From positions 8,040-72,039 of the forward strand of contig ADNK01001740.1 of the NCBI GenBank assembly GCA_000320545.1: a stretch of 64,000 bases of DNA. The letters are read 5' to 3'. Each line of letters opens with the position of its first letter. Position 1 is the first letter of the stretch. The stretch comes from Bigelowiella natans CCMP2755 (lineage: Eukaryota; Protista; Cercozoa). The position numbers were made by a program, and so were the translations under genes. Shown here in pieces: positions 8,390 through 64,000 of this stretch. The notes under the pieces were generated by a model that saw nothing but the letters and a program-made list of their open reading frames with translations, did no database searches and had not been told where the DNA came from.

Positions 8390-9850
8390 CGTGTGGTACA
8401 CGGTACACCACGAACAAGAGATGGAGAAGTGAGTCCTCAAACTTGCTGCTGGAACAGTGCTACCTGCCCATGCTGCCTAGCTCTCCATGTTCCAAAGCAT
8501 TGCGCATGCAACAGTTTCTTTGACAATGCGAGTCGGAAAATTGAACGAACGAAATGCTCTCACCAATCTAGCTAGCTAGGCATTTGCTTCAGCTCAGTTT
8601 CCGCATGCAACACGGCGTCGTCTAGCATCCACGTGATCACGCGCATGGCCCTGCTGCTGCAATGATGTCCACATGCTGGCATGTCTGGATGTGTTGATGT
8701 GTGCATGAGCAGGGCCAGCCATGCCAGAGTGGAGGGCACACCTGACATGCTAGCATGCTCCACGTTGTCATGCGAGCCCCAGCTAGCTAGAGCCAGTGAG
8801 CACTGGAGCACCAGAGCAGTTGTCCCACCACTCTGGCACTGCTAGACCAGACTGGAACAGAAGCACATTCGTGCTCTCACCACTTCTGAAAGTTGCTGGA
8901 CCACGCCAGCACGTCGTTGTTGGTTCGTTTGTCCAAGACCCCTCTGGCCCTCCTCCTTGCACGTCAGTCTTGTTGAGTGCAACAGAGTTTCGCTTTCGCA
9001 CCAACCACTTGGCGGGGTGCTGCGTCGAAAGTCACCAAATCGTTGACAGTTGCACACGCAACGTGCTCTGGTGCTGGGCTTGCCAGCTTGGCGCAAAGAA
9101 AGTCGCGACGAATTTCCACAAAAAGTCGAAAAGGTTCAAAGACTTGACCAGTGAACAGGCTGCTGACAAGCAAGTCAACTTGTGAAAAAAGTGAGTGGCC
9201 TGCCTCGCTAGCTCGCACACCCCAACAGCCAGCTGAACGTGCACATTGTTCACGTGCACCGTTCCAGCATTGACAACCTGCTTGAACTTCATCACTTTGT
9301 TTCATCTGGCTGATCGTGACGTCAAGTGCCTGCCGTTTCGACTGTTTCGGCGGCTCGTTGAAGTCGACCATTGTCCAGTCTCACGTTGCCATCGCTCACT
9401 GGAGGTGCTTGGCCCACCTAGCCACGTTGTGACGTTGCAAGTGGCAAATCGAGAAGCTGGGAAGCAGTTGCAACAGGAAAAACACTCCCCAGAGCCACTG
9501 TGGCGCCTGCGATGAAACGTGAGAACACATGGCATTTTGACTCTTCTTTGAGCCTTCATGATGCACGTTTTGAGGACATCATCCTGGGTTCCTGCTGGCG
9601 CGCCTTCCTTTGCAGGCTACGCATTCAGGTCTCTCACAGAGTGCGTCTCCAGATCCAAAAAAATCAACTGAAAGCAACCATGCCCATGTACCCCCCCGTC
9701 TCTTCTCTTGTGGAAAAATAGCTGTATTTTTTTCGGTAAATTTACCAAATCTAATTGCCACAGAGCACAAGGGCAAAAGGGCACAGGGTGAGATACTGGT
9801 GACACAGGAGCAATGGTACACCTTTTGACTTTTCCATCTACGAGTCTCTC
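8390..9850. other. Strongly TpA-depleted intergenic block
   Basis: Hand count for 8521-9616: 10 TpA, all within CTAG. CpG is plentiful. Confidence 0.9.
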
Positions 9851-13099: not shown

Positions 13100-15950
13100 G
13101 AAAACATTCAAAGCACAGCCAGCGCAGTTGTACTTTGGCAAGCCAAAGATGTGCACCAAAATGCCCTTTTGACGTGCAAATTAGAACTATGACAATGCGT
13201 AACGTCATGCATGCGATGCCTACCCATAGCTACGACTAGACATGTGTAGAAACATGTTTGGTTGAATTGGGTCACATCTAGAGCTGGGCACAAATAATTT
13301 TTTTTATTTGGAAATACTTTGCTTTATTGCTTCTGAACAAGTGTTTGATTTGAACAAACAATGCCTACATGTCGCGAAACTAGTGTTTGGTTTGTTCAAA
13401 TGATGTTCGAACAAGAAGCAGCATTTGCAAATATTTTCCTGTGAAAATCATTTGCAAATAATTTGAAAAATTTGAAACGTTCCCGCGCAGCTGTGCGCAA
13501 AGCACGACATGACAGACCAAATCGCAATGCATTTGAATGCGCATTGTGCAACGTGTGACAAAGGGAACAAACAATCGCACAGGCACAACTTCACAACTCA
13601 TTGCAGATAGACATAGTTGTTGCGTAGACGCTGTGCGCATGTAGATGTGCAGCATCATGGCGCACACATGCTGCCATTGAAAAGATTTAATCACTTCATT
13701 GCATCCGTCTCATGGCTACTCAGGACTCAGGACTCAGCCCCACAGACTCAGGAACCATTTTTCTCCACTTTGCAACCTCCAGCTGTGCCTTTCTCGTGTT
13801 TGAGAACTTTCCAAAATCTGTCCAACTTTGACAATTTGTTGAGCATCACCAATGCTTCAGCTGTGTCTGTCGACAATGCACTTCGACGCGCTGTCAGTGT
13901 CAAGCCACACAACAAGAAGATGCGTTCGGACTCGACTGACGCAGCTTCAAATCATCATTTTCCTTTTCATGCCGAGTGATGCTTCTCCAAAGTGGAGCTT
14001 CATGCATGAAGATGCATTCTAATGGAAAATGACAAGCCCTGCGGGTGGGGTTGTCAATTGCAAATGCAATTTGAAACAGTGCCAACATGGCATCTGATTG
14101 GTTGTTTCTTTGGTGAAATCAGGGAAGCAAAAGCAATGCAGCATGTTGCAGACACATGTTTTTGATTGCTAGTTTGTTGCACCAATGAGAATGAGCTGCG
14201 CTCTCGCAAGATGTGCACGATCGCAACAGCAGCTGCTGCACGTGCTGCTGACTAGCTAGCCCTAGCTGACCAGAGCTAGCATGAAGTTTCATCAGTGCGA
14301 GATGCTGGCGAGATGGTGGCGAGATGGTGGCGAGACGGATGCAATGAAATGATCTGTCACTTTTTTCAATGGTCCGTCACAATCTAGGACTGCACAGCCT
14401 GGCATGTGCAGTCCAACAGCACCAGAGCAGCAGTGCGCAGCACGTGTGCTAGCGCATGGCATGGCGGCTGTGTGCGTGCATGCTGTGCATGCGCAGCACG
14501 TGCGCAGGCCTAGCTAGCTAGCCTGGTCGCCGTGGCCACGTGGGTAATTTTTCTTCAGAAATTCACCGACAACGCAAGCTCAGGCGATCTAGTGATGTCG
14601 GTAATGATTGGCCACGCTAGACGCATGCAAAAGCTCAATTTTGGTGATTTTCTTGAAACATTTCCAAAAACGTTTGCAAACATGTTTGATTTGATTTGGT
14701 TTGAACAAATGCGAACATTTTGAAAAATTGTCTCCAAACACCAAACTCTTGCAAACTTGTGTTTGGTTTGTTCAAATGCTACTCTAGCTCATGCAAACAA
14801 GTGTTTGATTTGAACAAATGATGTTTGTTCAAACGTGTTTGCAAATGCATTTGTTTTCAAGCATTTGTGCCCAGCCCTGGTCACATCATGTCGACATGCT
14901 TGTGTCATCCATGTACCAGCCATAGTCCGCCCACTGCTAGATCTAGAGATGCGTGTGGCTGAGCTTCGATCGCGAGTGGACCACACAGTGGACTTTGAGC
15001 ATTCACTGGAATGCACAGGAATGCCAGAGATGAGCACCAGCCGCCCACTGTTTGTCTCTGTCTTTGCCAACGATGCTTCGACAAGCAGCAAATTGTTGCC
15101 ACTGTGCCACAGGTGTGAAGACTGAAGGCAGAGCACGCGTTGCGCCTGTTGCCACTGTCTAGCTGGTGATTCGCCGACCACTTTCAGTGCATGCGCGACG
15201 AGCGCCTCCAGCTAGTGCCAAAGTAGCTAGGCCTCCTGCTAGAGTCTGATCCAGCGCTGCTGATCAAAGCAGGCAGCAACAACACTGCTACTCACTGCAC
15301 ATGCTGTTCTGTGTCTAGAACAAAGAACTAGCTAGCTAGCTAGCGCTGAAGCGCAATGGCGCAGCGCGTGTGTGGACGCAGCGCATGTCAGTTGAATTGA
15401 CGGCATCGCCGATGTGCGGCGACGCAGCGACGACGAACAGCATGATAGACACAGTAATATCACATGTGTAACATGTACATGGCATTACATGTCTGTGATG
15501 AGCATCATGCTCACAACAGACACAGCAACATCACACACACAATGTGCACATGTCCACAATCAGCAACACGTTGGTCTTGAGCACCTCCTCCGCCTCCACC
15601 TGGCTCAGTTTGCTATTGTGGGAATGTACCAACCCAGCATGCTGGCATGGATGAATGAATGCCAGAACGACAAGACTGCTGGTCGAACGGGTTGATGTGT
15701 GCGACGCTCATTGCTTGTGTGTTCACGTGTGCTGACGTTGATCATCCGCGCTTTCAAAGTGTTGCACGACACTTGGAAAACACGAAACGCAGTACCTCGA
15801 GCTTGAAACAACGAAAACACCATGGTGTGCAAACCAGCATGGTGCAGAAAACGAGGAACATTGAACATTGCATTGAACGAGGACTCTGGATCCATGCGAG
15901 TTCACTTCGTCTTTCTTGGAGATCTTTTAACAACCAACAGCATCGGATGT
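13100..15950. other. Strongly TpA-depleted intergenic block containing the hAT element
   Basis: 13741-14160 has 1 TpA (CTAA). 14101-14525 has 10 TpA, all in CTAG. The left edge (13100-13460) retains more TpA. Confidence 0.9.
13279..14879. mobile_element. Non-autonomous hAT-type DNA transposon, 1601 bp
   Basis: Left end TAGAGCTGGGCACAAAT (13279-13295); right end reverse-complements to CAGGGCTGGGCACAAAT (14863-14879). A perfect 8-bp direct repeat GTCACATC flanks both ends (13271-13278 and 14880-14887). Subterminal motifs GTGTTTGATTTGAACAAA and GTGTTTGGTTTGTTCAAATG occur near both ends. An 8-bp TSD with YAG-starting TIRs is typical of hAT. No transposase motif was recognised. Confidence 0.88.
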
Positions 15951-16599
15951 CGTAGAAAATAAATGCTGTGAATTACCACATGCCCGATTTATTTTTAAAA
16001 CTAAGGCGGAAATAAAAAATCGGCCAGAAGAATGGCGACCCCTGCTCCCGTGGATGAGACTGTCTCGGTATGCCTTCTGCAGTCCTCCCCATAGGCACAA
16101 ATTGACTATCTGAGTAGAGGGGGGGATGTTTGTTTGAATATACTTTTTGATGCGTAAATTCAACATGAATCGTGTTCAATGTGCGGAGGAAAGATACAAT
16201 TTCAACAACGAAAGAAGGGCATGCTCGATAATTAAGAAAGCGGGACTGTAATGCCAAAGAAATCACGCAGATGTTCACCTATAGATGTTCAGTTACATAT
16301 GAATTTGATACTACGATTAACAATATTTTAATTGTTTCCATGTAGGACCTCGTCACGAGGTATGAAGAACACAAATCGCAGGTATGGCCGATAAAATATC
16401 GCCCGTGCAAACGATAAAGCACAGTTGTTCGATTCTTCCGTGGAAGAATGTAGAAATGCATTTCACGACAACGTGCATAACTATTATCTGGAGGTTGTAT
16501 GTACGATACTCCTAAGCCTGCGAAATAACACGCTCTTTCCGCGCAGCTTGGGCTTGTCTTCAATGCTACCCCACGGCATCGTCCGCCAACCCTAATCTC

Positions 16600-17455: not shown

Positions 17456-17490
<35 letters not shown>

Positions 17491-17524
17491 TATGTGTGTG
17501 TGTGTGTGTGTGTGTGCGTGTTTC

Positions 17525-22920: not shown

Positions 22921-22963
<43 letters not shown>

Positions 22964-24054: not shown

Positions 24055-24093
<39 letters not shown>

Positions 24094-24362
24094 GTGTGTG
24101 TGTATCTGTGTATATATAAATTTTTATAGTCATTAATTTGCGTGTAATTATATGTGTCTTGTATGTGTGTAGGAATCGGCCACGTTATAAACAACAAAGG
24201 AGGTAAGTAACCCTAATGCTCAAGCCATGTCAAAATGGAGAATATGACTCCTGTTCCAAGCGCTGCTATGGATCGGCCTTCCCTCCCCCCCTTCCTTTTC
24301 TCTCTCGCGTTCCATCTATAGAAGCTGCAGCTATTGCTGTTTGACATCCAATGATTTATTGC

Positions 24363-24514: not shown

Positions 24515-24580
<66 letters not shown>

Positions 24581-34200: not shown

Positions 34201-34776
34201 CTCCGCCTACAGAAGAAAGATAGCAAGCTAGCATGTGCTTGTCTCCCTTCCCCCTTCCCTCCTCTCTCTCTCTCTTTCCCTGAGTCTAATATATGAGGTA
34301 TGAATCGTAGGAATCAACTTCAATCAACCAATCTCTTTCAACGCTTGCTAATGTCATTGCTGTGCTCGCCTCGGGGAAGAAAGGGTAAGGACACAGCAGC
34401 TGCTGCGGAGATAGATTAGGCGGATGCTGAGTAGATATCCTTCCTAAGTGAATATAGATCACCATGACGGCATGTATGTGACTGTAATCCCTGTGTTTAG
34501 GTTTGTACCGTATCGAAACTCAGCACTTACGATGGTAAGTCTGAATTGAGTTGAGCACCAATAGTTTGCCTGTTGGCTGCCTCTTCATTGCAGTGTTCTC
34601 CACAAGCCTTTATCCCTCCTCTATTTTCCTCCCCACCGTCCTATTTTAAACGCTCTTGTGAATCAGCTCTTGAAGGACTCGTTGGGGGGGCATGCATCTA
34701 CTGTGATGTTCGCAAACATCAACCCTTGTGATAGGTACACACACACGCGCGCGCGCGCACACACACAAACACACAC

Positions 34777-34818
<42 letters not shown>

Positions 34819-35733: not shown

Positions 35734-35792
<59 letters not shown>

Positions 35793-38317
35793 ATGTGTGT
35801 GCGTGTGTATAATTAAATGTACATTTGCGCTTTGACACACCTAGGTTGACAATAGCGATTCCAGCAGCAATGCAGAAAGGACATCTTCTCTGGAGCTCAG
35901 TAGGCAGCAGTTGCGCCTTCAATTAGACATGTAGGCAGATACACCCTCGACTAATACCTTCTTTGCCGGAGAACTATATTGCTGCCATGTGAATTGGGCC
36001 GGGGACAAGTTGAATAGTAGTCCTTGCATGTCTTCGTTAGGACAAGGCGCGCAACAATACGTGGAATGTCTTTGGTTTCGGCAGCTTCCCCTCGGTTTGT
36101 CGCAACCCAAATATGGGGATTTTTCCCCCAATATTATATATATATATATATATATATATTTTATATTAATGTATGTATTTGAAATGGAAACTAGCGCTCA
36201 GGATGAAATTCGCCGTTGTCTTTTCTGCGACGGCTGCCGCTGTGTGATGCGTTGTGATTTTGCACAGGAGAGCCCAATCAGTGTTGTCCTAATCCTTAAT
36301 CCTTTCGATAGGCTGTTGTACAAAACAGGCCTTAGCTGTATTTGCCTTCCACACAATGTCACCAGCTCTTTTATCGACTTTCGAGCATTTCCTTTTTAGA
36401 CACGAAAATCGAATTTGTAGCTAATTATCTCGATGGATTTTTGACAGGCTACGAGTGCTGAGCTCTGGGGGGCCAGGCTGGGAGGATGACGAGAATAACG
36501 TTCTTAACGACGGCGATAGGAAAAAGTCGGAGGAGCATGCAGGCATGAAAATAACAACAAAATGCGTTTTCTATGTCAACTTCTGAGCTAATACCGCACA
36601 ATTGTATGTTCTACTAAATATAAAGACGGCAAGGGTGATACTGACACGGGCAATAGTTTATTGAAAGGTCTCTTTACATTGCATGGTTTTGGTGTTGGCG
36701 CTTACATGCATGCTGTTGTCGTGGTCATCGTCGTCGTTGTTGTTGTTGTTGGTGAACTTACAACTACCATGTCGTATGTGCAGTGGTTGCAGCTGCGATG
36801 TTGCGTCGAGGGTCTACTACTGTACAGGACCTTGCCTGTACAGCTCCAGTAGCAGATATGGAAGAAGACTCGGATGATGGGGACAATAAGGTGACGTCTT
36901 TAGCGAGTTTGGAACACATTGAAGAGTACGGATCGGCTCACACTATCGATCTTCTATAGGACGGCATGGACGCTGATTTGGCCTCCGCCATTGAATTGGA
37001 AAAGGACACTGGGCTGATGGATATGATTCAGGTACTGATGAAATTAGTAAGAAATGAAGGGCATAAGCGCATTGACTGATGGAAACCGAAGGAAATGCGG
37101 GGATCGGAAACACCAGACACAAAGAGCCCCAACCAACGTTCTGATGGTCAATACCCATTATAGTTTTTGTGTGCATTTTATCCCGTAGTCGAGTAAATCG
37201 TCACAGCAGCTAAAGGGGACGAAGGAAGGTGCTGCGAGAGAGGAAGAAGAGAAGAAGATTGCAATTGGACTTGGAGAGAAGCAAGAAAGCGAGGGAAGAG
37301 GTGGTGGCAAACTTGAGTCATCCGACGCTCGTCAGCCTCAGGTAAAGCAAATGCGTCGCCTAATAAATCAATTCCTATACCGACGTATCTTTCACGCTCA
37401 AGTCGCTCCTTTCTTAGGCTAGTAAGGGACTGCCCTCAGGCTCTAGAGAGTATAACTGGAGGTAGTAGTTATGGCCAACGTGTATTCGCACATGAGTATG
37501 AGCTAGTAACGAGGTGTATATGCGCATGTTTATTCGTGCGTGTCTCGGTATGTGCCTATCTCTCTATATGTCAATATTATATCTAAATAAACATTCGAAG
37601 AAAGTGAATACATGGTGACCCAAAATCACTGTACCCCCCCTCTCCCCCCCCCCACCCGCCTCCCCCCTCAATCGCCTCTAACTCCACGGCGCCTGCCATA
37701 CCCCACCCACTTTCCTTGATTTATGTGTTTTGGTTTTCTTTCCTTTTACTTCAGGAGCGGTTTTGCAAACGTGGATCCAGAGTCGATAAAAAATGTGAAA
37801 GTTAAGTACGAAGTTAGGACCGAGGTCGAATCGGAATATGATAAGCAGCTGCGAGAGGTAGTAGTGGAAGTAGTAGCAGTAATGGTGTCTTTTGATCAAT
37901 GAAGGCCCCAGATAAAAGTGAGCTGGTTGGCAAAGAATGATGCCATTGTTTTGTGTGCTGTATTAGCAATGCATATTCGTGTGTGCATGCGTGCGTGTGT
38001 GAATGTGTGTGTGTGTGTGTACACTACATAAAAAATCTAAATTAACACACTTGGGTCTGGTAAACTGCTTCCCAGATACAGGAAGAAAACGAGGCGTTAA
38101 GGAAGGCGTTGTCCGACGCACGACAGACCGCCTTCGTACCGGAACCAGTAATTCTCTCTTCGAAGAATAGTTTTGCCAAAGTGGCAAAAGGAATAGGATG
38201 CTGAATTTTCTGTAGTAGCTAGTCGTTGGATTACTACTCACCATTTCATTGCTTCTTGGCGTACAGGTTCGAAGACCCGGATGTCTTGGAATCACTAAGG
38301 ATTGCTCCCTGATGTAA
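31208..38317 (+). CDS. Kinesin motor protein with a kinesin-2-like neck, multi-exon; predicted C-terminus CSLM*
   Basis: Exons give EAIKVVVRCRPF, FTFDTVFG, FNSTVFAYG|QTSSGKTHTM (P-loop), SYMEIYNEQ, NSESSRSHAI (switch I), LNLVDLAGSER (switch II), SINQSLSTLANVI, VPYRNSALT, LLKDSLGG, ETTSTLRYAARAKK and the neck IKNRPRVNQDPKNALLKQLQSEIEKLK. The tail exons are low-complexity and less certain. The last exon is 38267-38317. Confidence 0.9.
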
Positions 38318-39746: not shown

Positions 39747-41105
39747 ATATAACATAACACCTTAAAGTTATGTTCTGATTTTATTTCTTTGCAGATATGT
39801 CTCTCTTTGCCCTTAGTGGCAGCTACCAGAACCTTGACCAAGGCCTCAGCCGTTGGCCTATCCTCTAAAATTGATGATGAAAATTGGCGCAATGATAGGC
39901 TACTACTTTCTCTTATTAACCCTCCCAAAGCATAGTAGTCCATAGTCTGACCCCATTGATTAGTCACCCCTCCCCCTTCAGATCTTCTTGTTGCTTTCTT
40001 ACCAGGCTTGCTCCGGTGGCATTTATGGAACAACTCTGTTCGCAAGTCCTTAGCCCCTGCCAACTCACTAGGTAGTTGCAGACGAAGATCACCTGTCCTA
40101 CACAACCACAGGCACTACTCTGTAACTGACACTCACGACACTGATTTCAAGAAAAAGCTCCGTGCGGCATTGACTGCGAGGCGCAAAAAAGGAGAAGGTC
40201 GCGTGGATGGAGACGGTAAATGAGAGAATGTGCTATTTTTGTTAATCACGTTTCCTAGAGTAGCAGAACTAGTATCACCGAATCCGTGCCATTGCTGTTC
40301 GGGAGTCCAATCCTGAGTAAGGCGCGCTTCGCCCCTTATGCACATCCAAGGAATCATACAAGTTAACACTGAAGGAATGACCCCCATACCACCATTGGCG
40401 CAAGCATTTTGGTATTTTTTCACAATGTTCATCCAACGTTTCATAACTCTTAGCGCAGGATAATCCGAAACATGATACTTCTTTTGCCTCTTCGGCGGAA
40501 AGCCTTTGGCTCTCGTTTGCCCTCCACCCATTCGGTGCCTCTTCCCTGCAAAGCATTACTACCTTTGTCAGTATTTCCCAGATAGACACACCTGCATCCA
40601 GAGGAAGAAGAGAATGGCACCGACAAACAACGAATCAGAACACTTCCAAACATTGTATATTGTGTAGTTACACCTCTAAGACTACAGCATACAATATTTT
40701 ACTACCGAGCATCCAGATATCGGATTTTGTGCTAAATTTGCCCTCAAAGCTCTCCGGCGCAATCCAACCCCATGCGACTAGTGAATCGATCTTATTTTTA
40801 AAAATTGGAGATAACACCAAATCGTCGGAAATCGATAAATCGATGTCTTCTATTTTCTTGAGACTACATGCACACATAGACACGTACCCACGTAGCAATG
40901 CATGCACGTATTACAGTATGATGAGCACGAGCAGAGCATGATGGTGCTGAAGGAGGACCTGCCTATAATACGATCTTTGACGGCCCAATTTCCTAGAAAG
41001 TCCTATGGATTTTGAAGATGATGTACCTCAAAAACTCCAAAATATCCTCCGCAATGCACAAATTTACACACACACACACACACACACACAGGTGCGCACA
41101 AATAC

Positions 41106-41136
<31 letters not shown>

Positions 41137-43950: not shown

Positions 43951-45759
43951 AACCTGTCACATAATGCGCTAAGGTCGTTGTTGTATGTTTGGTGTTGGCA
44001 TTGTCTTTGCTGATTTCGCTGTGTGCTACTCTATGAACTCGTATAATGGGAAAACATTGTTCAAGAATTTGCCTATTTAATTCAAGACGGACGATGGTAT
44101 CCGTCCCCTTGTCTTATAAAACTCTATATCAATTTATTTTGAGTTGAAATAAAAGCAAATCCGTCCTTATGTGCATTATTTCTTCCAGGTATCAATCCCG
44201 TAATGAGTTCTTCTTTCTCAGCCGATGAGAGTTAAGTTTTTATAAATCTCTCGATTCGTATATATATCTAGTATCGTTTCGTTCCCCTAATCTCCGTCTC
44301 CTTGCATTTCTCTCATTCCTCACCCATTGGAGGCCAGGCAGCAAATCCTGATCAAATAGCATAAGAAACACATTCAGCATTCAGCATACATATAGTAATA
44401 AACCGGAAAGCATCAAGCTTTTGGCGGCAGAATAAGATACACCCATCGTTAGGAGAGAATGCTCTTTAGCTTGTACGCATCCCCACACGTGAAGCTGCAA
44501 ATATCGCCATCTTCCGATAATACATGATTGTTCTTCCTGTTACTACTCGACGACCTCCTGCAGAAGAGCCTAATGCCACTCCATATTGATCTAAAGCTGA
44601 GAATAAACATTACAAGTCGAAAGTGAGGCGCCATCATGAGAAATACTCTGAGGAGTTCGTCTGGTTCAAAAAGCCGTTGCAGCAGCCGTTACCCCACCAT
44701 AATCTATTGTGACCATCATTATCTCAGCAAATGCTAGAGACAATGTAGTATGGAACAGTATTCATTCATCCCTTATCTTCATTCTACATGTTCAATACAC
44801 ATTGATTCGTCGTTCCGCCTATTCTTGTCTTACCGATATGCCGAGGAGTATTAGATGTCTCCTTCGATCGCCAGCAAAATTCCAGTCGTGCCGAAATTCC
44901 ATATTCCTCAGATATCATAGTAACTTTACGTGACATCTGAGCATTCAGTGAAGGCTGCTGACAGCACATGAGAGGGCAGCAGCATCCTACATACCTAACA
45001 TAGTAACCGAGGCTGTTGATGTAACTTCCGGCGAATAGTGGGTTTTTACTAGATAATTGTTCGCGAGAGGAGGAGCAAGAGACCAAATAGTTTTAGCATT
45101 TTGATAAGGTTAAATGGAAGAAGACTGACATGAGGCATATGGCCGAGCGTGTGCGACATTTATTTCCATCGTAAATACGATGTAACTCCGCTGAATATTA
45201 ACAAGGCGCGAGTTAGTGGGATATAGTTTGAAGAACCTCCGATGGACTAGCTGTCTATACCTTCGATTTCCTCATATTGATCTTGTGAAAGGACAGAGGA
45301 AAGAGCAGAGATGTATTCTGGAAACTCGTGACTAAGAGAACCTAGTAGAAAGGTCTAATTGGTGGCTATTATGCTTACTATCTCTAGCTTATGCGGTTAT
45401 GATACACAAAAGCTCGATTATCGATACTGATGGACAAACTGCAGCGATTTTGTCATTAAGGAAAAATAAGTGGAATAAGTATAGATGGCCTCGTTGGCTT
45501 GCTTGTGGTGAACAACGGTGAGAATACCTCCAAAGCAAAGCCATAATTCAACAGTCTTTTCCTGTTTACTCTTCGAGGAAGCAAAGGCTATAGGAGCAAG
45601 GAAAATGCGCCCTGTAATGGAACAAGCTGCAAGTCAAGGTTGTGCAGAACGTGACTGAACTGAAACGGAACCTTCTGGCTTCATCGAGAAGTGAGGGCCT
45701 AAGCATCAAAGCATTTTAGAAGAAGATCATGTTTGTTCCATGCTTCGACATCCCCACTA

Positions 45760-47100
45760 GTTAGAGTTGTTGATCTTAGTGTCCATTTGTTCCAAGGACC
45801 GAACTGACCAATCCCAAAGACTCACCGATTTTCGTGTACATCGCTCGTTCCGGGAAGACTGACGTTTGCATTGAGTTTTGAGTAAACGCATGCCGTTTGC
45901 ATGGTACGATGGCACTTCTGGTGTTGTCGCAGTGATGCATTTCAATGCCCAATTGCCCACATCGCACGATGATCGCAGTTGGAGAACTCTGTCATTGACT
46001 GCCCAGACTGTCTCACCACTTTGAACATCTCTTGCTCAGAACCCCGCTAGCCCGGCTGTCAGCCATCTTTTGGACCACAACGAGCATTGCTCAGAGGTGG
46101 CCCTTGCACATTGCAGTCTTCTGGCCTTTGTGATGACTGAGTTGCGCGCAAAACCACAGCTAGCACAGGATCAACGTCGGTGAATTGCTTGGAGCTAATT
46201 TTCGGCAAAAATCATCGCCAGGTGTCACGCCGTTGCGCCAGCTCAGCACCCACCGAATCCTCTCTTTGTGAGAGAAAAACAGAAATTCTCATGGCTGGAT
46301 GGTGATGTGCAATCCTCTGCTAGCTCTGCTAGCTAGCTAGCTGCTAGCTAGCTAGCCAGAGCCAGCTTGCCACTCTGGACCTCTGGACCTCGCTAGCTCG
46401 CTGGCTAGCTGGGTCTTCAGATGTCTGGCTAGCTGGACGTCTCTAACTAGCTAGGTCTAGACTAGCAGAGGTCTCCAGACCAGCTAGTCAGGTTGTGTTC
46501 GGCTCCAGCTAGCTCTGGAGCTGGGGCTGGCTCTGGCTAGCTGGGGCTAGCTGGTGGGGTTCACTGGCGAAGCTGATGAGATGACGCGGTGTCGCTAGCT
46601 CTGCTAGTCTAGATCTATTGGTGGTGCTGCAATGTCACGCTTCTGTGCGCTGGCTCTGTTAGCTCTAGAGCTAGCTAGCTAGCTAGTCTGCGTCTGCACA
46701 TGCTTCGACACTTTAATCGCTTCAATCAATGTGGTGAACATTGCGCATTCTAGCTAGCTCTAGAGATAGCATTGAACATCAATCAATGAACGGAGAATTG
46801 ATGCAAAACGACGTGCTAGCGTGTGCAAGAATCAGACAGTTAAATGGGAGATCTAGAGATGTCCAAATGTGTGTTTAGTAGCGTTGCACACCCTAGCTAC
46901 TAGGCTAGCCTAGCACGCAACACTGCTAGACCGGATTAGTGGAGCAGAGGGGCGCCCTCACTAGCTCACTAGCACAAACAGAAATCAATACGTTCATGGA
47001 TTCAAGTCAACTACCCATAAATCTTTGATTTCTGAAGTTCTAAACGTTTGACTGACTAGTTTGCAAACCCATTGATGCACACGATCTACCTCAGTTGTTA
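45760..47100. other. Strongly TpA-depleted block with a CTAG-saturated core
   Basis: 45961-46310 is nearly TpA-free apart from CTAG and one CTAA. 46311-46690 carries about 26 CTAG by hand count. Confidence 0.9.
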
Positions 47101-49329: not shown

Positions 49330-51250
49330 AGTGATGCAACGATGCATCAAATGTCATGTGTGGATGCTGGGGAAACGCACAATCAGATGAAACATGTTTG
49401 TGTGTGCTCTTAAGATTCATTGCAGATAGGAAAAGTAAATGAGGCAAGAAAGGTCAAACGGAGTAAAAGATTTAGTCTCTCAACCAGATTTTGCAAATTC
49501 ATCCATGGCATCTTGTGTCTGTCCTTCCATTATTCTACTTGTTTGTCCGCCTGCTTGTGCCTACCTTTCTCTGATAGAGAGAAGTTGACTCGCTGGTGGC
49601 GCGCCTTTCGTCGTGAATTTGACCTTTAAGAGATTTGAATATTGCGGATGTTGGCTTCCGAACAACAATGAGCGACTGTTTCAATATCGCGACAAAAATG
49701 TAAGAATTGTCGTAGTTTCCTAACGTACCTGCATTACGTTTGCCGAGGAAATATGAAGTGGAAGCATGGATTTCAGGTTTTGTACGGAGAAATCCTCAAA
49801 AAGGGGTACCAGATGACAGGCTGTTTTTTATTTAAATGCCTGCAAAAATTAAAGTTAACAAAGTTACGTCTGGAAAAACAAACGTCTTACACAGATAGCG
49901 CACATTGCGTGTGTGTGCGAATCCAACAACTAGAACCATTTTTTAGGATTCTAGCCAACAATCCGGATTGAACACAATTCATTTTCGATTTCTTTTGGAC
50001 AAAAGCATTGAAAAGTTGCAAATAATTCTGGTGGATCGTCATTTCGGTGGCGTCATTTGAATCTGAGTTACTCATCCGACGAATATCCAGTTTTCGCATG
50101 CGTTCTTCCGTGTAGCTGGAGCTCGAAAACTCCAAATTCCTTTGTAAATTGGTGCAGAGAAAAGCGCAAGGTCAGCATCTTTAGTTTCCCTGAAACACAC
50201 TTGAATGTTGTAGTTGATGCTCACGTTTGAGGTGGAAAATGCGTTGGATTCAACCCGATTGTTGTCACACTCGAACAAAATGTGCCGAAGAATCCAAGTG
50301 TGGGGGCATCTGTGTCCACTAATGAAAAGAAGCATGTGACGCATGCGCACGCGCGGTGAATAGCAGCGGTCACTGTACGAGCTAGCACTATCAATCTTGC
50401 ACACCCTACAAAATGCTTCACTTCCTGTCAACTGAAGTACCGGAAAATTTATGAGTGCTCACTTGTCAGGATGTTCCTTTGGGATCTTTACCACAATCAT
50501 GCAAAAATGAACAGCAAACATTGAACTTCGCAATTCGCAATTTTGCAAAATGATTTTGACAACCTGCAGACGATTTTTTGTTGACGTCATGTTAGAAATG
50601 AAAACTTTTTGTGTGCTTTCAGCCTTCGCACAGGCTGATCCGTTTTCCAAGTCGCTTTTGCTGGAATCTAACTAGCTTGTTGGCCGGGGTGTGGGGATTT
50701 TGTTGAAACGTTGAGATCAAGTGATCATCAGAACCAATCAAGAATGTGCTTCTTGTCATTTGTTCGAACCATGCGGCGCATGTTGAACGCAGATTTGCAC
50801 TCAGCGTTGGCACAACCATTGCATTGCCTGTTGTTGTCTGTCTTTCAGTGCATTGCATGCATGTTTGATCGAACAAAGCGCACACTCACTGGCATGTCAA
50901 TTTGCATCAGTTTTGTTGTCCTGGGATGGTAGCACAGAATCAACAATGCACATCAGACATCACAGGTGCATCGTGCCAACGATTTGAACTAGACACATGC
51001 ACATGCATCATTTTTCTTCGAAAGGGCGATTCAGCAACTCTGGAACTGAATTGCCCCTTGCTCCATCAATCCATTCATTCAAAAGGAGAAAATTGCCCTT
51101 CACTTCATCAAATTATTCATTTAAAAGGAACATCTACTACATCGCATGTGTTTGAATTCGCATTCCATGCCCTGAAATCTTGCTCCATATGATGCAGTAC
51201 ATCGAGGATGGAAAACCTGCGTATTGCAAACAAGTAGCAAGCAGCATAAT
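49330..51250. other. TpA-depleted intergenic block, strongest at 50450-51110
   Basis: 50701-51110 has two TpA, one in GTAG and one in CTAG. Confidence 0.8.
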
Positions 51251-58300: not shown

Positions 58301-58384
<84 letters not shown>

Positions 58385-58412
58385 CTATATATAAATAATA
58401 TATATATATATA

Positions 58413-58477
<65 letters not shown>

Positions 58478-60288
58478 TTGAACATATTTTTGTGGTTACA
58501 ATTCTATAATAGGTGATTGTAAGGCGACTGGTACTACAAAACTGCAAAAGGAGTTTGAACTCCGCGTCGCCAAGAAAACAATGTAAAGAAATGGAAATTA
58601 GATGATGGGGTCTTGAGAAACACGGGGCCAAAAATAACAATTCTGAAAACAGATTATCAATACTACATATCATTCCTTCTCTCCATTCCATTCATTCTAC
58701 ACACACTGATAAATATACTTCTTCTTCATCGTCCTCATAAATAGGGGGATGGCAAATATGGCAGACACCGATGCCATCAGCTTCGAGAAATATGTGCTGG
58801 TTTTTAAGGTATTGGAAAATGGAGAAGGAATGTTTAATGTAAACGTGTGGACTCGGATTTCGACACAACAAAGCAAAGGCGAATACACTGATGGCGCTTC
58901 ATCGTGCAATCGGACAACCTCATGCCTGTCTAGAACTGCCTCGTTTTTTTAATATGACTCTGTGTCTCATTTGGGAAACCCCCAGCATGAACCTCGAAAG
59001 TGCGAACATTTGAGGGCAATTCCTTCAATGAGATCGCGTTGAAGCTACATCCTACAATCCATCCCCCCCCCCCCCCACTAACGGATTATCATTGATTATT
59101 TTCGCAGAGACTTGGCGATAATACGGTTTTATATGTGCTTGGCGATCCTGATGAGAATGAATTGATGCTGGCAACCGTTTTGTAAGTCCACCGCCACGCC
59201 ACAAGCAATCTATTCATCATAAAAAGTTATTGTTGGGAGAAAGAAGCGCATGCCAACGTTGTCATGATTAATGTGTTTTAAAACCTTCATGGCTCGAGGC
59301 ACGTGCGATGGATGCACTTGCTACATCCCATATGCTATTGAGAAGAGGCTGTGCTTTACGCGCTGCTGACTTTTCTTTTGCTGCTGCTTTTCTCAGAAAC
59401 GCTTATGAGGAGTCCGTGTCGCAGCTTCTGAGAGGCCAGGTATCATCCCCCCCCCCCCTCTCACGCCTCTTTCTGTATGTGTGCGTGTATCGCAATTATT
59501 CTAACTCCACATCACGAATTATTAAATCTCATGCGCGTAAAATCTATCATTTACAGCTCGATGCGAATTCTATGCTGCAAGGGCTTGCAGAGGTACTGCT
59601 TTCTCCCAACCCACCTTTTCGCGTTGATCCGTGGATAGGGACAACTAATCCAAATGAGCGGTTACGCATCCGAGATGTTGTTCGCAACGAGAGACCGATT
59701 TGCCATATATTCGGCTGAAGTAATTCACATTGTCGTCGTGTTTGTGCTCTCCCTACTCAATAGGTGTGCCTCTGTGCAGACGAGATCGTTATGGACGGGT
59801 TAATTATGGAGACTGATTCTCTGTTGGTAAGAATAACAATGGACACAACTATGATTGCTTGAATAGTAGTAGTAGTACTAGTAGTAGTAATAGGCGTCGT
59901 CATTGCAGTCATCTTACACATGATATAAATGCCAATTCGTATGAACACCGGGAAAACGCTTTTATGCACCCAACTCTCTACTACTGGTTTCTTTTTTTTT
60001 TTTTTTGCACGTCTAATCATCTTTTTGAGTTGCTGTTCGTGTGCTGTTTCTCTACAGATCGCTGGGAGGGCGTCAATGGCGCAGACGATAAAGGAAATTC
60101 CTATACAGGTGAAGATTTCACGCGAGGAAGTTTCGAGATAATTTGCGTCGTCCTCATACCTACTCCGTTTCTTCTCACTACTTGTATGAACCCGGCCTTC
60201 CATGCTGGAAATTATCTAAATTTAGGACCAGACTCTGCAGCAGTTTGCTTCCTCGGCAAAAGAAAAACTTTCAAATTTCCTCCGATGA
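57793..60288 (+). CDS. COPZ1: Coatomer subunit zeta (zeta-COP), multi-exon
   Basis: Exons join as METKNVFAPSIKGLFILDED|GKRIYAKYWT|..QKEFELRVAKKT|..DAISFEKYVLVFK|RLGDNTVLYVLGDPDENELMLATV|LNAYEESVSQLLRGQ|LDANSMLQGLAE|VCLCADEIVMDGLIMETD..|IAGRASMA..IPIQ|DQTLQQFASSAKEKLSNFLR*. This matches the zeta-COP motifs ILDxxGxRxxAKY, ENELML and DEIVxxGxIxExD. Confidence 0.9.
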
Positions 60289-60781
60289 AGCGCCTAACAG
60301 TGAAGAAAAGGGATGGACGAGACTCTTGCGTATAGTAGCTGAATGCGTCATCGAGCCTATTAAGCATTTGTTTGTTTCGTTCATCATTAATACTATATCG
60401 TACGGATTTAGATATTTATTTGTTTCGTATACGCCGCTATTGCGGCTCCATGATATCAAATTGAGTCACACTAGCACGGTAGCTCATAGCCTAGTAGCGC
60501 TTGCCTTTGCGTTTTGCAATCAAAAATGTTGTTGCATCCAGCATTGTAGCCACGCTAGCACGCTGCATTTGCGTATGGCGCGCAGGGCTAGGCTAGTTAG
60601 CTAGAGTGTGGCGCAGCGCCCAGTTCATATAGATATGTTCACATCTACATCCTACGTACAATGAGGTGTGCATATGTTACATTATTATATATATTATTGA
60701 CACGTAATGTCATGTATGTGTTACATGTGCTATCACTTTATTGTCCATTGTTTGTCATCTACAGAATAGAATGAGTCCTCC

Positions 60782-62310
60782 TCAGCGATCTGAAGTCTTA
60801 AAATTAGATTTAAGTTGTGTTGTCCAGGATTTTTTGGGAATCTTGTACGAAAACTTAAATGCTTGTTTTCCAGGTCTATTTCCGTACTGAATACGAAAAG
60901 GATATCTGCTGCCTGCTTCAACATTGCACACCTTTGCAGTCTTACGCCGGTGTCTGTTGTTCACCTTTATTGGCTTTGACATGTTCCCAAAATATAGCTT
61001 GGAGACTCCATAGCGGTTTTCCAATCGGAAGTTGTGGCACCCACTAGTCGTAGCATCGAAGAAGCCTGTGAATTGAAAGCTTCGACTACCAGATGCAACT
61101 CTGCTGAACGAAATTCTCCCGACCACCTTACTTGCCTTTGCCTTATTAACGTCGAAGAATCCATCTTGTCCGTAATAAAACCCCTGGTAGATTTCCTTAC
61201 GCAACCCCCTTTTGAGGTTATTCCCTCCCGGAGATGTGTTCGCGTTTTTGGTTGGCTTTGGAGTGGGTAGTTTCGTTGGTCTCGAAGCAGAAGATCCGCT
61301 ACAGTTTGGGAGATTCTTAGGATTTCCCGGAAGACAAGCAACATTGGTTGTGGCTTCAGTGGTGATGTGACTAGCATCATGTGGCAGCATCCGTGGATTT
61401 TGATAGGTGAGTTCGGTACATCTGTTTACAAGGGGCTGGGTCACCGGACTGCCTCCTCTGCAATTGTCAATGACTTGCTGGAGGAAGTTCTCCTCCCATC
61501 TGCTGAGAAAGTCGGCATGCAGATATTTAGTGCCATCCGCAAAAACTACGTTCCCTCCAGGACAATCCTGAATCCCTAGAAAGAGCCACAACAGTGGGAG
61601 TTTGATGGGGTGGGAGCGCGGACAGCTGTCGAAGTGATCAGCCTGGATGCGGCTGCCTTGTCCGTAGCTAACGTGGGCACGCCCGTTTGGGGACGTGATG
61701 TCTCTCCCGTTCCAGCAGTGAGGAAAGATCATTTCCATTTCGAAGAAGTCATCCTCGCAACTAGCCAAAGGTTGGTTGCTGCAGCCTTCGCTGACTTCTA
61801 CATGCTGCTCGCATGCTTTTCCTCCTCCTGTCGTCTTTCTCGACGAGAGAGTGAAAATCAGGCTTCCAGCATGTGTCAGAGGCGAAAACAAGGCAACAAA
61901 TGTCTACTGAGCAGGGTGGCACGCACGGAGAATCCATTGGGAAAAGCCCTGGTGTCCGAGTTTTGCAACCATGTGCAGCACATGTGGAGCACGATTTTCT
62001 CCCTTGGAACCAGATCACACTTTCCTCCCCTCTTCCTGCACACAGCTGGCACCCAATGCAAGCTCTTGTTCTCTTTGATGGAAGCAGTGGTCTTGGAAAT
62101 TTCTCTCAGCTTTGTCCAGTCTGCATCAGGATCGGCACTGGGGGCTCCGAAGAATGGGTGAACGTGACCGCTGAGACCGTTCTGTTTCAGAATGGGGTCC
62201 GTTCTGACCTCTGCAAATGGTTTTGCCTCAAAGTCGAACGACACTCCAACAACACACTCAATGACCAGAGCTGCTGCAAGCACGAGAGCTTCATTGACGG
62301 TGGGAGCCAT
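60782..62310 (-). pseudogene. Secreted DUF1996 + PA14-like domain gene, frame-broken and mutated Tyr to Cys/His
   Basis: ORF 61876-62310 has a signal peptide, RTDPIL..SGHVHPFFG and SLHWVP (canonical SxYWxP). ORF 60782-61891 has FPHCWNG, HVSY, CPRSHPIKLP, LHADF..W..LQQVIDNC, a P/T/K linker and a PA14-like C-terminus (FQFTGFF..HNFRL..SKLYF..YPFRIQYG). The frame break near 61880-61920 is either a frameshift or a degenerate intron. Confidence 0.8.
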
Positions 62311-63096
62311 GGAGGATGTGTTGTGGCTGGAACCCTTTTTCGCATCTTTCCAGTCACAGCGGCGGTCCGAAGAAGCTTGCTCGTCACGGGATTCACGTCC
62401 TAGCGTCCTTGCTCAGAGAACCGATCCCATCGAGATTCCCATGCGAATTCAAGCGCCACGTGCTGCTCCGGGCTTGCGCCTGCATCTGAATCCAGACATT
62501 AGTCTGGAGTTTCACAGGAGAAAACGTTTGCACAGTGATCCTCCCGTTTCCATCATTGCAATGAACTAGTGAATTCGCCTCCATCTTCATGTCGCAGGAC
62601 CAAAATCGCATGGACGATCGTGTAACAATTCGACTTGGGCTACAAGCATGCAGCGGCTGCTCTTGGGTGTTTCCTTGCAGGCCCGCAAATTGAAGTGGGG
62701 CAGCGTCCGAAAATGGTTAAAAATGGAGGCTGTTTTCAGGAGAAAGTGTTTGGTGAAACTCCCAACAAAGTCGATTTGCTTGTTGTTCATCATGGATCAT
62801 CGTGTGAACATGGCCTTCAGGAAGTTTTTGCAACGACTGTTGTTGAGGCTCTGTTGCATGTGTACGCTTGTCTCCCATGTGGTTCTTGCACATGTAATTT
62901 TGATCAATGCTTTGTTCATCTTCATCTTTTGCTCGCAGTGGAGGCCCTGCGTCGTCAGAACTTTGCCGCTAGTGTCATTGCAACTCAATGACTGGATCTT
63001 GCCAATCAGAAAACCCAGCTAGTTGATTTGCTAGTGACAGTCCTCACTGAAGCCAGTTCGAGGCACTGCATTTCGAACACTGCAAACGTCTTGTCA

Positions 63097-63308
63097 CACT
63101 TTGGAAGTGTGGTTCTTCATCATTGTTCATTGTTCATTGTTCATTGTTCATCTGCCAGCCTGCGTGGACAAGGAGGCACTGCGTTTCGCACACTGCAATT
63201 GTCTTGCAAACAACAGTTTGGAAACGTGGTTCATCGTCATTGTTCATTGTTCATTGTTCTTGCAACACTTTGGAAGTGTGGTTCATCATCATTGTTCATT
63301 GTTCATTG
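63097..63308. repeat. Three copies of a ~45-bp unit ending in (CATTGTT)n
   Basis: The unit CACTTTGGAAGTGTGGTTCWTCATCATTGTTCATTGTTCATTG starts near 63097 and 63266; a more diverged copy starts near 63216. Confidence 0.8.
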
Positions 63309-64000
63309 GACTTGAGTGATCGCAGCTGTCCGGCGGATGTGAAACGAATCCTCAATTGTTTTCCTTTTGTGGCAAGCTGCTTGGGGAGGATGCGGATGAG
63401 TCATCACCTTCCCGCCCTCCGATGATCCTTTCAGACCTCTTTCAAGAACCAATTTGCGCGTTCATTCAATCACTTGTTGTGGCATTTGTCACTGGAGGAA
63501 GAACTGAGATCCAAGCTGCGGAACGCGTGCGTGTTCCAGGACTGCGCGCTTGGAATGCCCTTTTTGAAAGGTCGCTTGGAATGTGCCATGGAACACGTGC
63601 TTGGCATGCACGTTTGAAAAACACGCACACCAAGCACGCATTCCATGGAATGTGCGCTCATTTCATCACTTCATCATCCGCACTCCGCCGTGTTCTCACG
63701 CACTTCTCCAGGTGCAACCAGCTGGCAGACGCGCTGCTTGCCAATGCTTGCAGTTGCACGTCAATGCAATCAAAGCTTTGAAAACAAAAACACTGAAACC
63801 CTGATGATGAAAACACGTTGTGAGCTTGAGCATGCATGCTGAAACAAGCTCCCAAGAGGACATCACCGCTCGCACGCGGGTCTTTTGACTTTTGCGCGCG
63901 CGTTTCACTTGCTGCTGCAACTAGCTCAGTTGAACACATCACATCACCGCCACTTTCAGATGAAATGGCAACACTTTTCCCCAACATTGTTTCGCTGACT

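What the first reader, a model, noticed from the sequence alone, without database searches (positions are those of the whole stretch)
60782..62310. DUF1996-PA14 gene caught mid-conversion: Tyr codons turned to Cys/His along a gradient
Seen: the first ~220 codons, nearest the fully converted block, contain no Tyr. Positions where Tyr is expected read CAT, TGC, TGT or CAC: SLHWVP (canonical SxYWxP), AVCRK, GKCDLV, LHMCCTW (the DUF1996 YY site) and QDCPGG. The distal PA14 part keeps 8 Tyr in about 135 aa (EIYQGFYYG, NRYG, KLYF, SRYP, IQYG, FSYK). TAY to TGY and TAY to CAY are the two strand products of A to G at TpA. Inference: this gives the direction of the change independently of composition, and suggests the process spreads from the block core into a neighbouring host-type gene.
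Basis: partly seen in the sequence, partly recalled or inferred. Interest (0 to 1): 0.8.

Follow-up and report, generated by a model that had tools for sequence, protein, structure and literature searches.

The report
Gene half-eroded by TpA hypermutation
In the alga Bigelowiella natans, a cellular-type gene has lost nearly every TpA in its front half, which turned six conserved tyrosines into cysteine or histidine; this is a clear local footprint of a TpA-to-TpG/CpA hypermutation process that a 2026 preprint already described for this species.

Summary
The window is Bigelowiella natans nuclear DNA. The minus-strand gene at 62310-60782 is JGI model Bigna1 76453 (DUF1996 + PA14/GLEYA).

- **Tyrosine loss:** at six columns where 47-53 homologues carry Tyr (four invariant or nearly so), this gene reads CAT, TGC, TGT, TGC, TGC and TGT. 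The homologues include two B. natans paralogues. Each codon is one TpA>CpA or TpA>TpG step from TAY.
- **Specificity:** other conserved residues are kept (29/33), but Tyr only 1/5.
- **Gradient:** TpA counts per 50 codons run 0,0,2,2,4,5,7,7,9. There is no TpA at all in 61906-62400. An expressed paralogue has normal TpA content.
- **Boundary:** the TpA-poor patch (about 61320 to at least 64000) ends inside the gene. It is patchy, not a smooth gradient from a core.

The process itself is already described: TpA>TpG/CpA hypermutation in B. natans (Mettrop et al., bioRxiv 10.64898/2026.01.13.699255). This scan's first readers also noted it on other pieces of the genome.

What is new here is one gene-level case. 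It gives the direction of change from protein conservation, and it shows collateral damage to a cellular-type gene.

"Spreading from a core" and "mid-conversion" remain unproven. The frame break near 61880 is bridged by a plausible intron. No transcript was found.

The parts
60782..62310 (-). Gene Bigna1 76453: DUF1996 domain, Pro/Thr/Lys-rich linker, PA14/GLEYA domain; stop codon TGA at 60782-60784
61496..62199 (-). DUF1996 domain (PF09362), interrupted by the intron or frame break
   Evidence: a family HMM aligns it as one continuous domain when the conserved AFPNGF motif is kept
60827..61102 (-). PA14/GLEYA domain with normal TpA content; the 3' part of the gene holds 8 Tyr codons
61835..61926 (-). 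Most plausible intron (GTGCGT...AG, 92 nt). Neighbouring GT/GC-AG alternatives of 59-95 nt cannot be told apart. The JGI intron 61863-61969 deletes the conserved W..AFPNGF motif and scores 20 bits lower.
62056..62058 (-). CAT (His85) where the family has invariant Tyr (49/49): TpA>CpA
62038..62040 (-). TGC (Cys91) where the family has Tyr (46/49): TpA>TpG
62017..62019 (-). TGT (Cys98) where the family has Tyr 26 and Phe 9 of 47: TpA>TpG; a less conserved column
61975..61980 (-). TGC TGC (Cys111, Cys112) at the invariant YY of the family's YYxW motif. The next codon is ACA (Thr) where the family has Ile/Val.
   Evidence: A second MAFFT run instead placed His109 on one of the Tyr columns; either placement is a TpA-type change.
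61562..61564 (-). TGT (Cys in QDCPGG) where the family has Tyr (46/53): TpA>TpG, in the partly converted zone
61664..61666 (-). TAC, the one conserved Tyr (49/53) that survives (HVSYG), in the partly converted zone
61906..62400 (.). 495-bp stretch with no TpA, covering the start codon, exon 1 and part of the 5' flank
61320..64000 (.). TpA-poor, TG/CA-rich patch. The index TA/(TA+TG+CA) is 0.05 here against 0.35 to the left. It runs off the window end. TpA is absent from 63033-63921.

Best explanation
The 5' two-thirds of this gene (promoter, exon 1, intron and most of the DUF1996 domain) lie inside a patch of at least 2.7 kb. That patch has undergone the heritable, DNA-level TpA>TpG/CpA hypermutation of Bigelowiella natans.

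Shown:
- Every TpA in 61906-62400 is gone, whatever its codon position and whether coding or not.
- In the reading frame this turned near-invariant TAY Tyr codons into TGY (Cys) or CAY (His).
- The loss fades over a few hundred bases around 61320-61900, so the PA14 half is untouched.

Inferred:
- The gene was a conserved cellular-type DUF1996 paralogue until it was hit, because its non-Tyr conserved residues are still intact.
- It is now probably inactive and unexpressed.
- It still looks like an open gene because this mutation type cannot create a stop codon. TAA gives TGA or CAA, and TAG gives TGG or CAG.
- The enzyme is unknown. The preprint proposes an ADAT2-like adenine deaminase.
- Why the patch sits here is not known. 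It could be spill-over from a neighbouring target, or targeting of silent chromatin.
For: - Species and gene identity.
- Published process with the same signature (231 new mutations, all but one A>G or T>C and all of those at TpA; 124 TpA-poor clusters holding 96 genes).
- Polarity: six Tyr columns read Cys/His here, each one TpA-type transition away from TAY. No homologue has Cys there.
- Specificity: at columns at least 90% conserved, Tyr is kept in 1/5 and non-Tyr in 29/33 (Fisher p = 0.004).
- Control: the expressed B. natans paralogue (L001) has a TpA frequency of 0.046 with observed/expected 0.72. Reverting its TG/CA sites to TA improves the fit to the family at 0 of 98 nonsynonymous sites, against 8 of 87 in this gene (p = 0.002).
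- Both strands are hit about equally: on the + strand, TG 38 and CA 39 in 61900-62310.
- Gradient and change-point.
- No transcript: two exact 29-30-mers are absent from the contig collection that holds the paralogue's transcript, and the protein searches return only the ab initio model.
Against: - There is no orthologue above 50% identity, and the gene sits on a very long branch (2.31 against a median of 0.54). The timing of the changes is therefore unknown, and the ancestral state is inferred from 35-40% identical relatives.
- By the preprint's strict cluster rule, only the 1-kb bin 63001-64000 passes both thresholds inside this window.
- The gene is not in the preprint's Table S6 or in the held part of Table S8.
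- The reading frame can be kept open by a plausible intron, so inactivation is not proven.
- Absence of a transcript is weak negative evidence.
Confidence: 0.78

Rival explanations
1. Junction, not spill-over. The DUF1996 part plus the upstream DNA belonged to a targeted element (foreign, mobile or duplicated) and was hypermutated as such. The PA14 exon sequence has a different history. On this reading the boundary at about 61320 is a recombination or insertion junction.
For: The best single change-point (61320) falls in the low-complexity linker between the two domains. None of the nine close homologues checked combines DUF1996 with PA14; they carry WW, WSC or Hint modules instead.
Against: A sigmoid fits better than one step (AIC lower by 7.6). 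The zone 61320-61900 is only partly converted: one conserved Tyr is kept and one is converted. Nothing in the block looks viral or transposon-like. B. natans has its own DUF1996 paralogues.
Confidence: 0.12
2. The gene itself is the target. TpA hypermutation marks transcriptionally silent chromatin, and the patch is centred on this silent gene's promoter and 5' end rather than on a neighbouring foreign element.
For: No transcript was found for this gene, while its paralogue has one. The cleanest TpA-free stretch covers the start codon and exon 1, not the DNA further upstream. The preprint notes that the hypermutable NCLDV region is transcriptionally silent. Four more short TpA-poor patches with no recognisable foreign content lie in this 64-kb window.
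Against: Silence could be the result of promoter erosion rather than its cause. There are no chromatin or expression data. The second TpA-free stretch, 63033-63921, lies well upstream.
Confidence: 0.2
3. Ordinary divergence. This is an old, fast-evolving paralogue whose Cys/His residues are neutral or adaptive. The local lack of TpA reflects codon usage or compositional constraint.
For: Long terminal branch and only 35-40% identity to the nearest relatives. The reading frame is open. Most conserved non-Tyr residues are kept.
Against: - TpA is also absent from the intron region and the 5' flank.
- The loss is specific to Tyr among conserved residues.
- All six changes are single TpA-type transitions, none is the usual Tyr>Phe, and no homologue has Cys at these columns.
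- The expressed paralogue has normal TpA content.
Confidence: 0.05
4. RNA-level hyper-editing (ADAR-like, A>I after U) of a transcript, followed by reverse transcription and insertion as a retrocopy.
For: The UA context matches the ADAR preference discussed in the preprint.
Against: Both polarities occur side by side in equal numbers (TG 38, CA 39; Tyr>Cys and Tyr>His). The depleted zone runs at least 1.7 kb upstream of the start codon. The gene appears to contain an intron. The preprint shows that the mutations arise in genomic DNA of mutation-accumulation lines.
Confidence: 0.02

Closest known systems
TpA>TpG/CpA hypermutation of integrated NCLDV and virophage DNA in Bigelowiella natans (Mettrop et al. 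2026, bioRxiv 10.64898/2026.01.13.699255)
   Same: Same species. Same dinucleotide target and the same two strand products. Same long-term signature: TpA depletion with CpA+TpG enrichment in kb-scale clusters that also hold some host-type genes.
   Different: Here the affected sequence is a cellular-type DUF1996 gene with host paralogues, and the edge of the patch lies inside the coding sequence. The direction is read from protein conservation, not from mutation-accumulation lines. The preprint's main text does not mention tyrosine, stop codons, flanks, spreading or boundaries. This gene is not in the preprint's tables as far as they are held.
Fungal repeat-induced point mutation (RIP) and its 'leakage' into neighbouring single-copy genes (e.g. 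PMC4943192, PMC3105345)
   Same: A regional, dinucleotide-specific transition process. It can run into adjacent non-repeat coding sequence and shift the amino-acid composition there.
   Different: The chemistry and direction are opposite: RIP is C>T at CpA and creates TpA, whereas here TpA is destroyed. RIP creates stop codons and this process cannot. Dependence on repeats and linkage to a sexual cycle are unknown here; the block has no copy within the window.
ADAR hyper-editing and AID/APOBEC clustered deamination
   Same: Clustered, context-specific deamination-type transitions. The 5' U/T preference resembles that of ADAR (and general knowledge).
   Different: ADAR acts on double-stranded RNA and its edits are not inherited. 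AID/APOBEC deaminate cytosine. Here the change is at adenine, in genomic DNA, and on both strands.

Membership tests
B. natans TpA hypermutation footprint (Mettrop et al. 2026) | Changes are A>G / T>C transitions confined to TpA | tested here: met
   Six conserved Tyr codons read TGY or CAY. TA-reversion improves the fit to the family at 8 of 87 nonsynonymous sites, against 0 of 98 in the paralogue.
B. natans TpA hypermutation footprint (Mettrop et al. 2026) | TpA depletion coupled to CpA+TpG enrichment | tested here: met
   For 62001-64000, TpA observed/expected is 0.15 and 0.05, and the mean for TG and CA is 1.43 and 1.67. The index TA/(TA+TG+CA) is 0.05 against 0.35.
B. natans TpA hypermutation footprint (Mettrop et al. 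2026) | [quoted passage not shown] | tested here: inconclusive
   Only 63001-64000 passes both thresholds. 62001-63000 passes TpA only, and 61001-62000 passes neither (0.46 and 1.18). The patch runs off the window at 64000.
B. natans TpA hypermutation footprint (Mettrop et al. 2026) | Target is foreign DNA (viral or transposon) | tested here: not met
   The four upstream ORFs tested (62192-63987) have no Pfam hit. The gene has two B. natans paralogues and widespread eukaryotic relatives. The preprint itself reports host-type domains among depleted genes.
B. natans TpA hypermutation footprint (Mettrop et al. 2026) | Elevated new-mutation rate at the locus | not testable with these tools
   This needs the mutation-accumulation and T0 read data for this scaffold.
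Fungal RIP | C>T at CpA, producing TpA excess and AT-rich DNA | tested here: not met
   The direction is the opposite: TpA is lost and GC rises to about 0.50, against about 0.42 nearby.
Fungal RIP | Acts on duplicated sequence | tested here: inconclusive
   The block has no copy elsewhere in the 64-kb window. The rest of the genome could not be searched.
DUF1996 (PF09362) protein family | Match to the family profile above the gathering score, with the conserved His, Cys, Pro and Gly framework | tested here: met
   47.1 and 45.1 bits against a cut-off of 27. 29 of 33 non-Tyr conserved columns are kept.
DUF1996 (PF09362) protein family | Invariant tyrosines (SxYWxP, YYxW) and the tail signature HxDxxxGW | tested here: not met
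   Tyr is kept at 1 of 5 columns. The tail reads HADFLSRW, with Arg in place of a Gly that is 98% conserved.

The most novel reading that the evidence does not exclude
TpA hypermutation in B. natans may not be confined to foreign DNA. It may act on short (1-3 kb) patches scattered among ordinary genes; this 64-kb window holds five. It may be directed by silent chromatin rather than by foreignness. Because it never makes stop codons, it would leave open but dead reading frames that annotation pipelines still call genes. This gene would be the first dissected case of such host-gene erosion.
Probability: 0.3. Interest if true: 0.65.

Novelty: new member of a known kind. Interest (0 to 1): 0.45.

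Why it matters
The preprint established the process from mutation-accumulation lines and from composition. This locus adds three things.

- **Independent evidence of direction.** Invariant Tyr codons are turned into Cys/His codons in a conserved protein family.
- **Damage to a cellular-type gene.** The patch edge is resolved to a few hundred bases inside a coding sequence. This bears on how targets are delimited.
- **An annotation caveat.** The process destroys stop codons and cannot create them, so eroded genes stay open and may be counted as genes. The 96 genes the preprint reports inside TpA-poor clusters are candidates.

The locus also offers a simple assay: the 40 TpA sites left in 60782-61899 can be followed in mutation-accumulation lines or other strains.

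Tried and rejected
- **Flanking DNA and paralogue DNA.** The look-up of encoding contigs found no record for P0001 or P0002, so I could not see beyond 64000 or obtain genomic DNA for paralogue 86113.
- **ORF1 homologue search** found nothing in its length range.
- **Pfam on TpA-poor patches.** Pfam on nine ORFs from the TpA-poor patches gave no hit. Such ORFs are expected by chance, because TAA and TAG are erased there.
- **Similarity between patches.** blastn between the block and the rest of the window, and among the five patches, found no similarity.
- **Internal tandem copies** at 63050-63320. Their differences were mostly CA/CG and did not inform on TA ancestry.
- **Preprint supplements** searched for 76453, DUF1996, PA14 and scaffold_41: no occurrence, but sheets S9-S14 are not held.
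- **Structure.** The AlphaFold model of the paralogue's DUF1996 domain has pLDDT 95, but Foldseek found no PDB match (best E = 0.25). The role of the lost tyrosines could therefore not be read from a known fold.
- **Phylogeny**. This gene's branch is too long to place it reliably with the B. natans paralogues.
- **Frame break as evidence of a pseudogene:** rejected. Several GT/GC-AG introns of 59-95 nt restore one continuous DUF1996 alignment.

Full report
**Identity of the locus**

The window is eukaryotic. It has dinucleotide microsatellites throughout and few long ORFs. ORF 61891-60785(-) is 100% identical to JGI protein Bigna1 76453, an ab initio 'fgenesh1_pg' model of 473 aa. The genome is therefore Bigelowiella natans, a chlorarachniophyte alga. 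Pfam finds DUF1996 split over two reading frames: profile positions 1-98 in ORF1 (62310-61879) and 132-237 in ORF2. It also finds GLEYA and PA14 in the 3' part.

**The frame break**

The JGI model bridges the two frames with a 107-nt intron, 61969-61863. That intron removes the family's conserved W..AFPNGF motif, which ORF1 plainly encodes. Several other GT/GC-AG introns of 59-95 nt keep the motif. One is GTGCGT at 61926 to the AG at 61835, which gives AFPNGFS|TTGGG against the family's AFPNGFKMIGGG. On an HMM built from 49 homologues these alternatives score 251-256 bits as one continuous domain. The JGI splice scores 232 bits in two pieces. The break is therefore most likely an intron, not a frameshift. 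The exact splice site needs RNA data.

**The observation**

An exhaustive HMMER search found 1,694 relatives. The nearest are 35-40% identical. Two of them are B. natans paralogues:
- Bigna1 86113, an EST-extended model.
- Bigna1 144449, which has a transcript in the MMETSP and JGI sets (locus L001).

In alignments with 44-63 homologues, this gene compares with the family as follows:

| Codon in this gene | Window position | Family residue |
|---|---|---|
| His85, CAT | 62056-62058 | Tyr 49/49 |
| Cys91, TGC | 62038-62040 | Tyr 46/49 |
| Cys98, TGT | 62017-62019 | Tyr 26, Phe 9 of 47 |
| Cys111 and Cys112, TGC TGC | 61975-61980 | Tyr-Tyr 49/49 each (YYxW motif) |
| Cys, TGT | 61562-61564 | Tyr 46/53 |

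No homologue has Cys at any of these columns. Each codon is one TpA>TpG or TpA>CpA step from TAY. One conserved Tyr survives (TAC, 61664-61666).

A second alignment run placed His109 rather than Cys111/112 on a Tyr column. That alternative is also a TpA-type change, so the conclusion does not depend on the alignment.

At columns at least 90% conserved, the gene keeps 1 of 5 Tyr but 29 of 33 other residues (Fisher p = 0.004). Two of the four non-Tyr misses lie in the intron zone and are read-through artefacts.

In the spliced model that is codon 180.

**Composition**

TpA counts per 50 codons run 0, 0, 2, 2, 4, 5, 7, 7, 9, then 4 in the last 24 codons. No TpA occurs in 61906-62400 or in 63033-63921. 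Per kb, TpA observed/expected is 0.46, 0.15 and 0.05 for 61001-64000. The mean for TG and CA rises to 1.43-1.67.

The expressed paralogue serves as a control. Its TpA frequency is 0.046 (observed/expected 0.72), with 23 TpA in its first 150 codons against 2 here. At that frequency, the chance of a 495-dinucleotide stretch with no TpA is 9e-11.

I also reverted TG/CA sites to TA and asked whether the fit to the family improved. It improved at 8 of 87 nonsynonymous sites in this gene and at 0 of 98 in the paralogue (p = 0.002).

Both strand products are equally common: on the + strand, TG 38 and CA 39 in 61900-62310.

**The boundary**

I modelled TA against TG+CA sites over 59500-64000:
- The best single change-point is at 61320, in the inter-domain linker, with the index falling from 0.35 to 0.05.
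- A sigmoid (midpoint 61360, scale 200 bp) beats a single step by 7.6 AIC units.
- A two-step model fits best: 61320 and 63040, with index levels 0.35, 0.07 and 0.005.

The block is uneven. The index is 13/101 in 61320-61900, 1/78 in 61900-62400 and 11/120 in 62400-63040 (chi-square p = 0.02). There is thus a real 5'-to-3' decline inside the CDS (Spearman p = 9e-8). The picture of smooth decay from a 'core' is not supported, because the gene's 5' end is cleaner than its own upstream region.

Four other short TpA-poor patches lie in the window: about 8400-9600, 13400-16000, 45500-46300 and 49900-51100. Their edges range from sharp to about 600 bp wide.

**What is known**

A 2026 preprint (Mettrop et al., bioRxiv 10.64898/2026.01.13.699255) reports a mutation-accumulation experiment in B. 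natans:
- 231 of 302 new nuclear single-nucleotide mutations fall in one integrated NCLDV region and one virophage region.
- These are almost exclusively A>G or T>C, and all such changes are at TpA.
- Genome-wide there are 124 TpA-poor, CpA+TpG-rich clusters holding 96 genes, some with host-type domains.
- An ADAT2-like deaminase is proposed as the candidate enzyme.

The 'reverse-RIP' process that this scan's first readers noted on several other pieces of this genome is therefore already described. The preprint's main text does not mention tyrosine, stop codons, flanks, spreading or boundaries. Gene 76453 is absent from its Table S6 and from the held part of Table S8; sheets S9-S14 are not held.

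**Interpretation**

The most likely reading (about 0.78) is that a patch of this hypermutation overlaps the gene's promoter, exon 1, intron and most of the DUF1996 domain.

The intact non-Tyr framework suggests that the gene was under purifying selection until the event. The loss of 5 of 6 key Tyr shows no selective retention, so either the mutation rate outran selection or the gene was already dispensable.

Further departures from the family's signatures are not TpA-type and hint at some relaxed constraint:
- DPIxxP reads DPILKQ.
- HxDxxxGW reads HADFLSRW.

The terminal branch is four times the median.

No transcript was found. Two exact 29-30-mers are absent from the contig collection that does hold the paralogue's transcript. 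This is weak negative evidence.

From the genetic code, TpA>TpG/CpA cannot create a stop codon and can only remove or interconvert them. An open frame is therefore no evidence of function here.

**Rivals**

- The 61320 boundary is a junction between DNAs of different history. The domain-linker position and the unusual DUF1996+PA14 architecture favour it. The partly converted zone argues against it.
- The silent gene is itself the target, not a bystander.
- Ordinary divergence.
- A retrocopy of a hyper-edited RNA.

The last two fit poorly. Non-coding TpA loss, both-strand products, the upstream extent of the patch and the intron all argue against them.

**Comparison with known systems**

This is the same process as in the preprint, in a new kind of place. 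It resembles RIP 'leakage' into neighbouring genes, but with opposite chemistry and without stop-codon creation.

**Verdict**

The direction of change is supported. 'Spreading' and 'mid-conversion' are unproven. The finding is a well-resolved new instance of a recently described phenomenon.

Noticed in passing
window 17460-17521, 24058-24113, 24516-24575, 34737-34813, 35740-35797, 41073-41131, 58345-58480: Long (TA)n microsatellites that adjoin another dinucleotide repeat have (CA)n on their left and (TG)n on their right (about 9 cases; exceptions at 22928, TG on the left, and 26885, CA on the right). These are the repeats that TpA>CpA and TpA>TpG would make from a (TA)n tract. They may equally be ordinary compound microsatellites.
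   Followed up: partly
window ~8400-9600, ~13400-16000, ~45500-46300, ~49900-51100: Four more short TpA-poor, TG/CA-rich patches. ORFs in three of them have no Pfam hit (45500-46300 was not tested), and none of the patches resembles another or the 62300-64000 block at the DNA level.
   Followed up: partly
window 61863-61969: The intron of the public JGI model (Bigna1 76453) deletes the conserved W..AFPNGF motif of DUF1996. Alternative introns within 61828-61926 keep it and score about 20 bits higher on a family HMM.
   Followed up: yes
L001:70-1407 (transcript of B. natans paralogue 144449): The DUF1996 domain of the expressed paralogue folds with pLDDT 95 and pTM 0.91, but has no Foldseek match in the PDB (best E = 0.25). 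The fold appears to be unsolved.
   Followed up: partly
window 5832-8138 (+): A 768-aa ORF with a glycoside hydrolase family 16 domain (E = 3e-19). The 6251-6750 stretch is TpA-poor (observed/expected 0.40) but has no TG/CA excess (1.08), which looks like ordinary coding composition rather than conversion.
   Followed up: no
window 63050-63320: An imperfect tandem repeat of roughly 100 bp, containing (CATTGTT)n, lies inside the TpA-free block. The copies differ mainly by CA/CG.
   Followed up: partly
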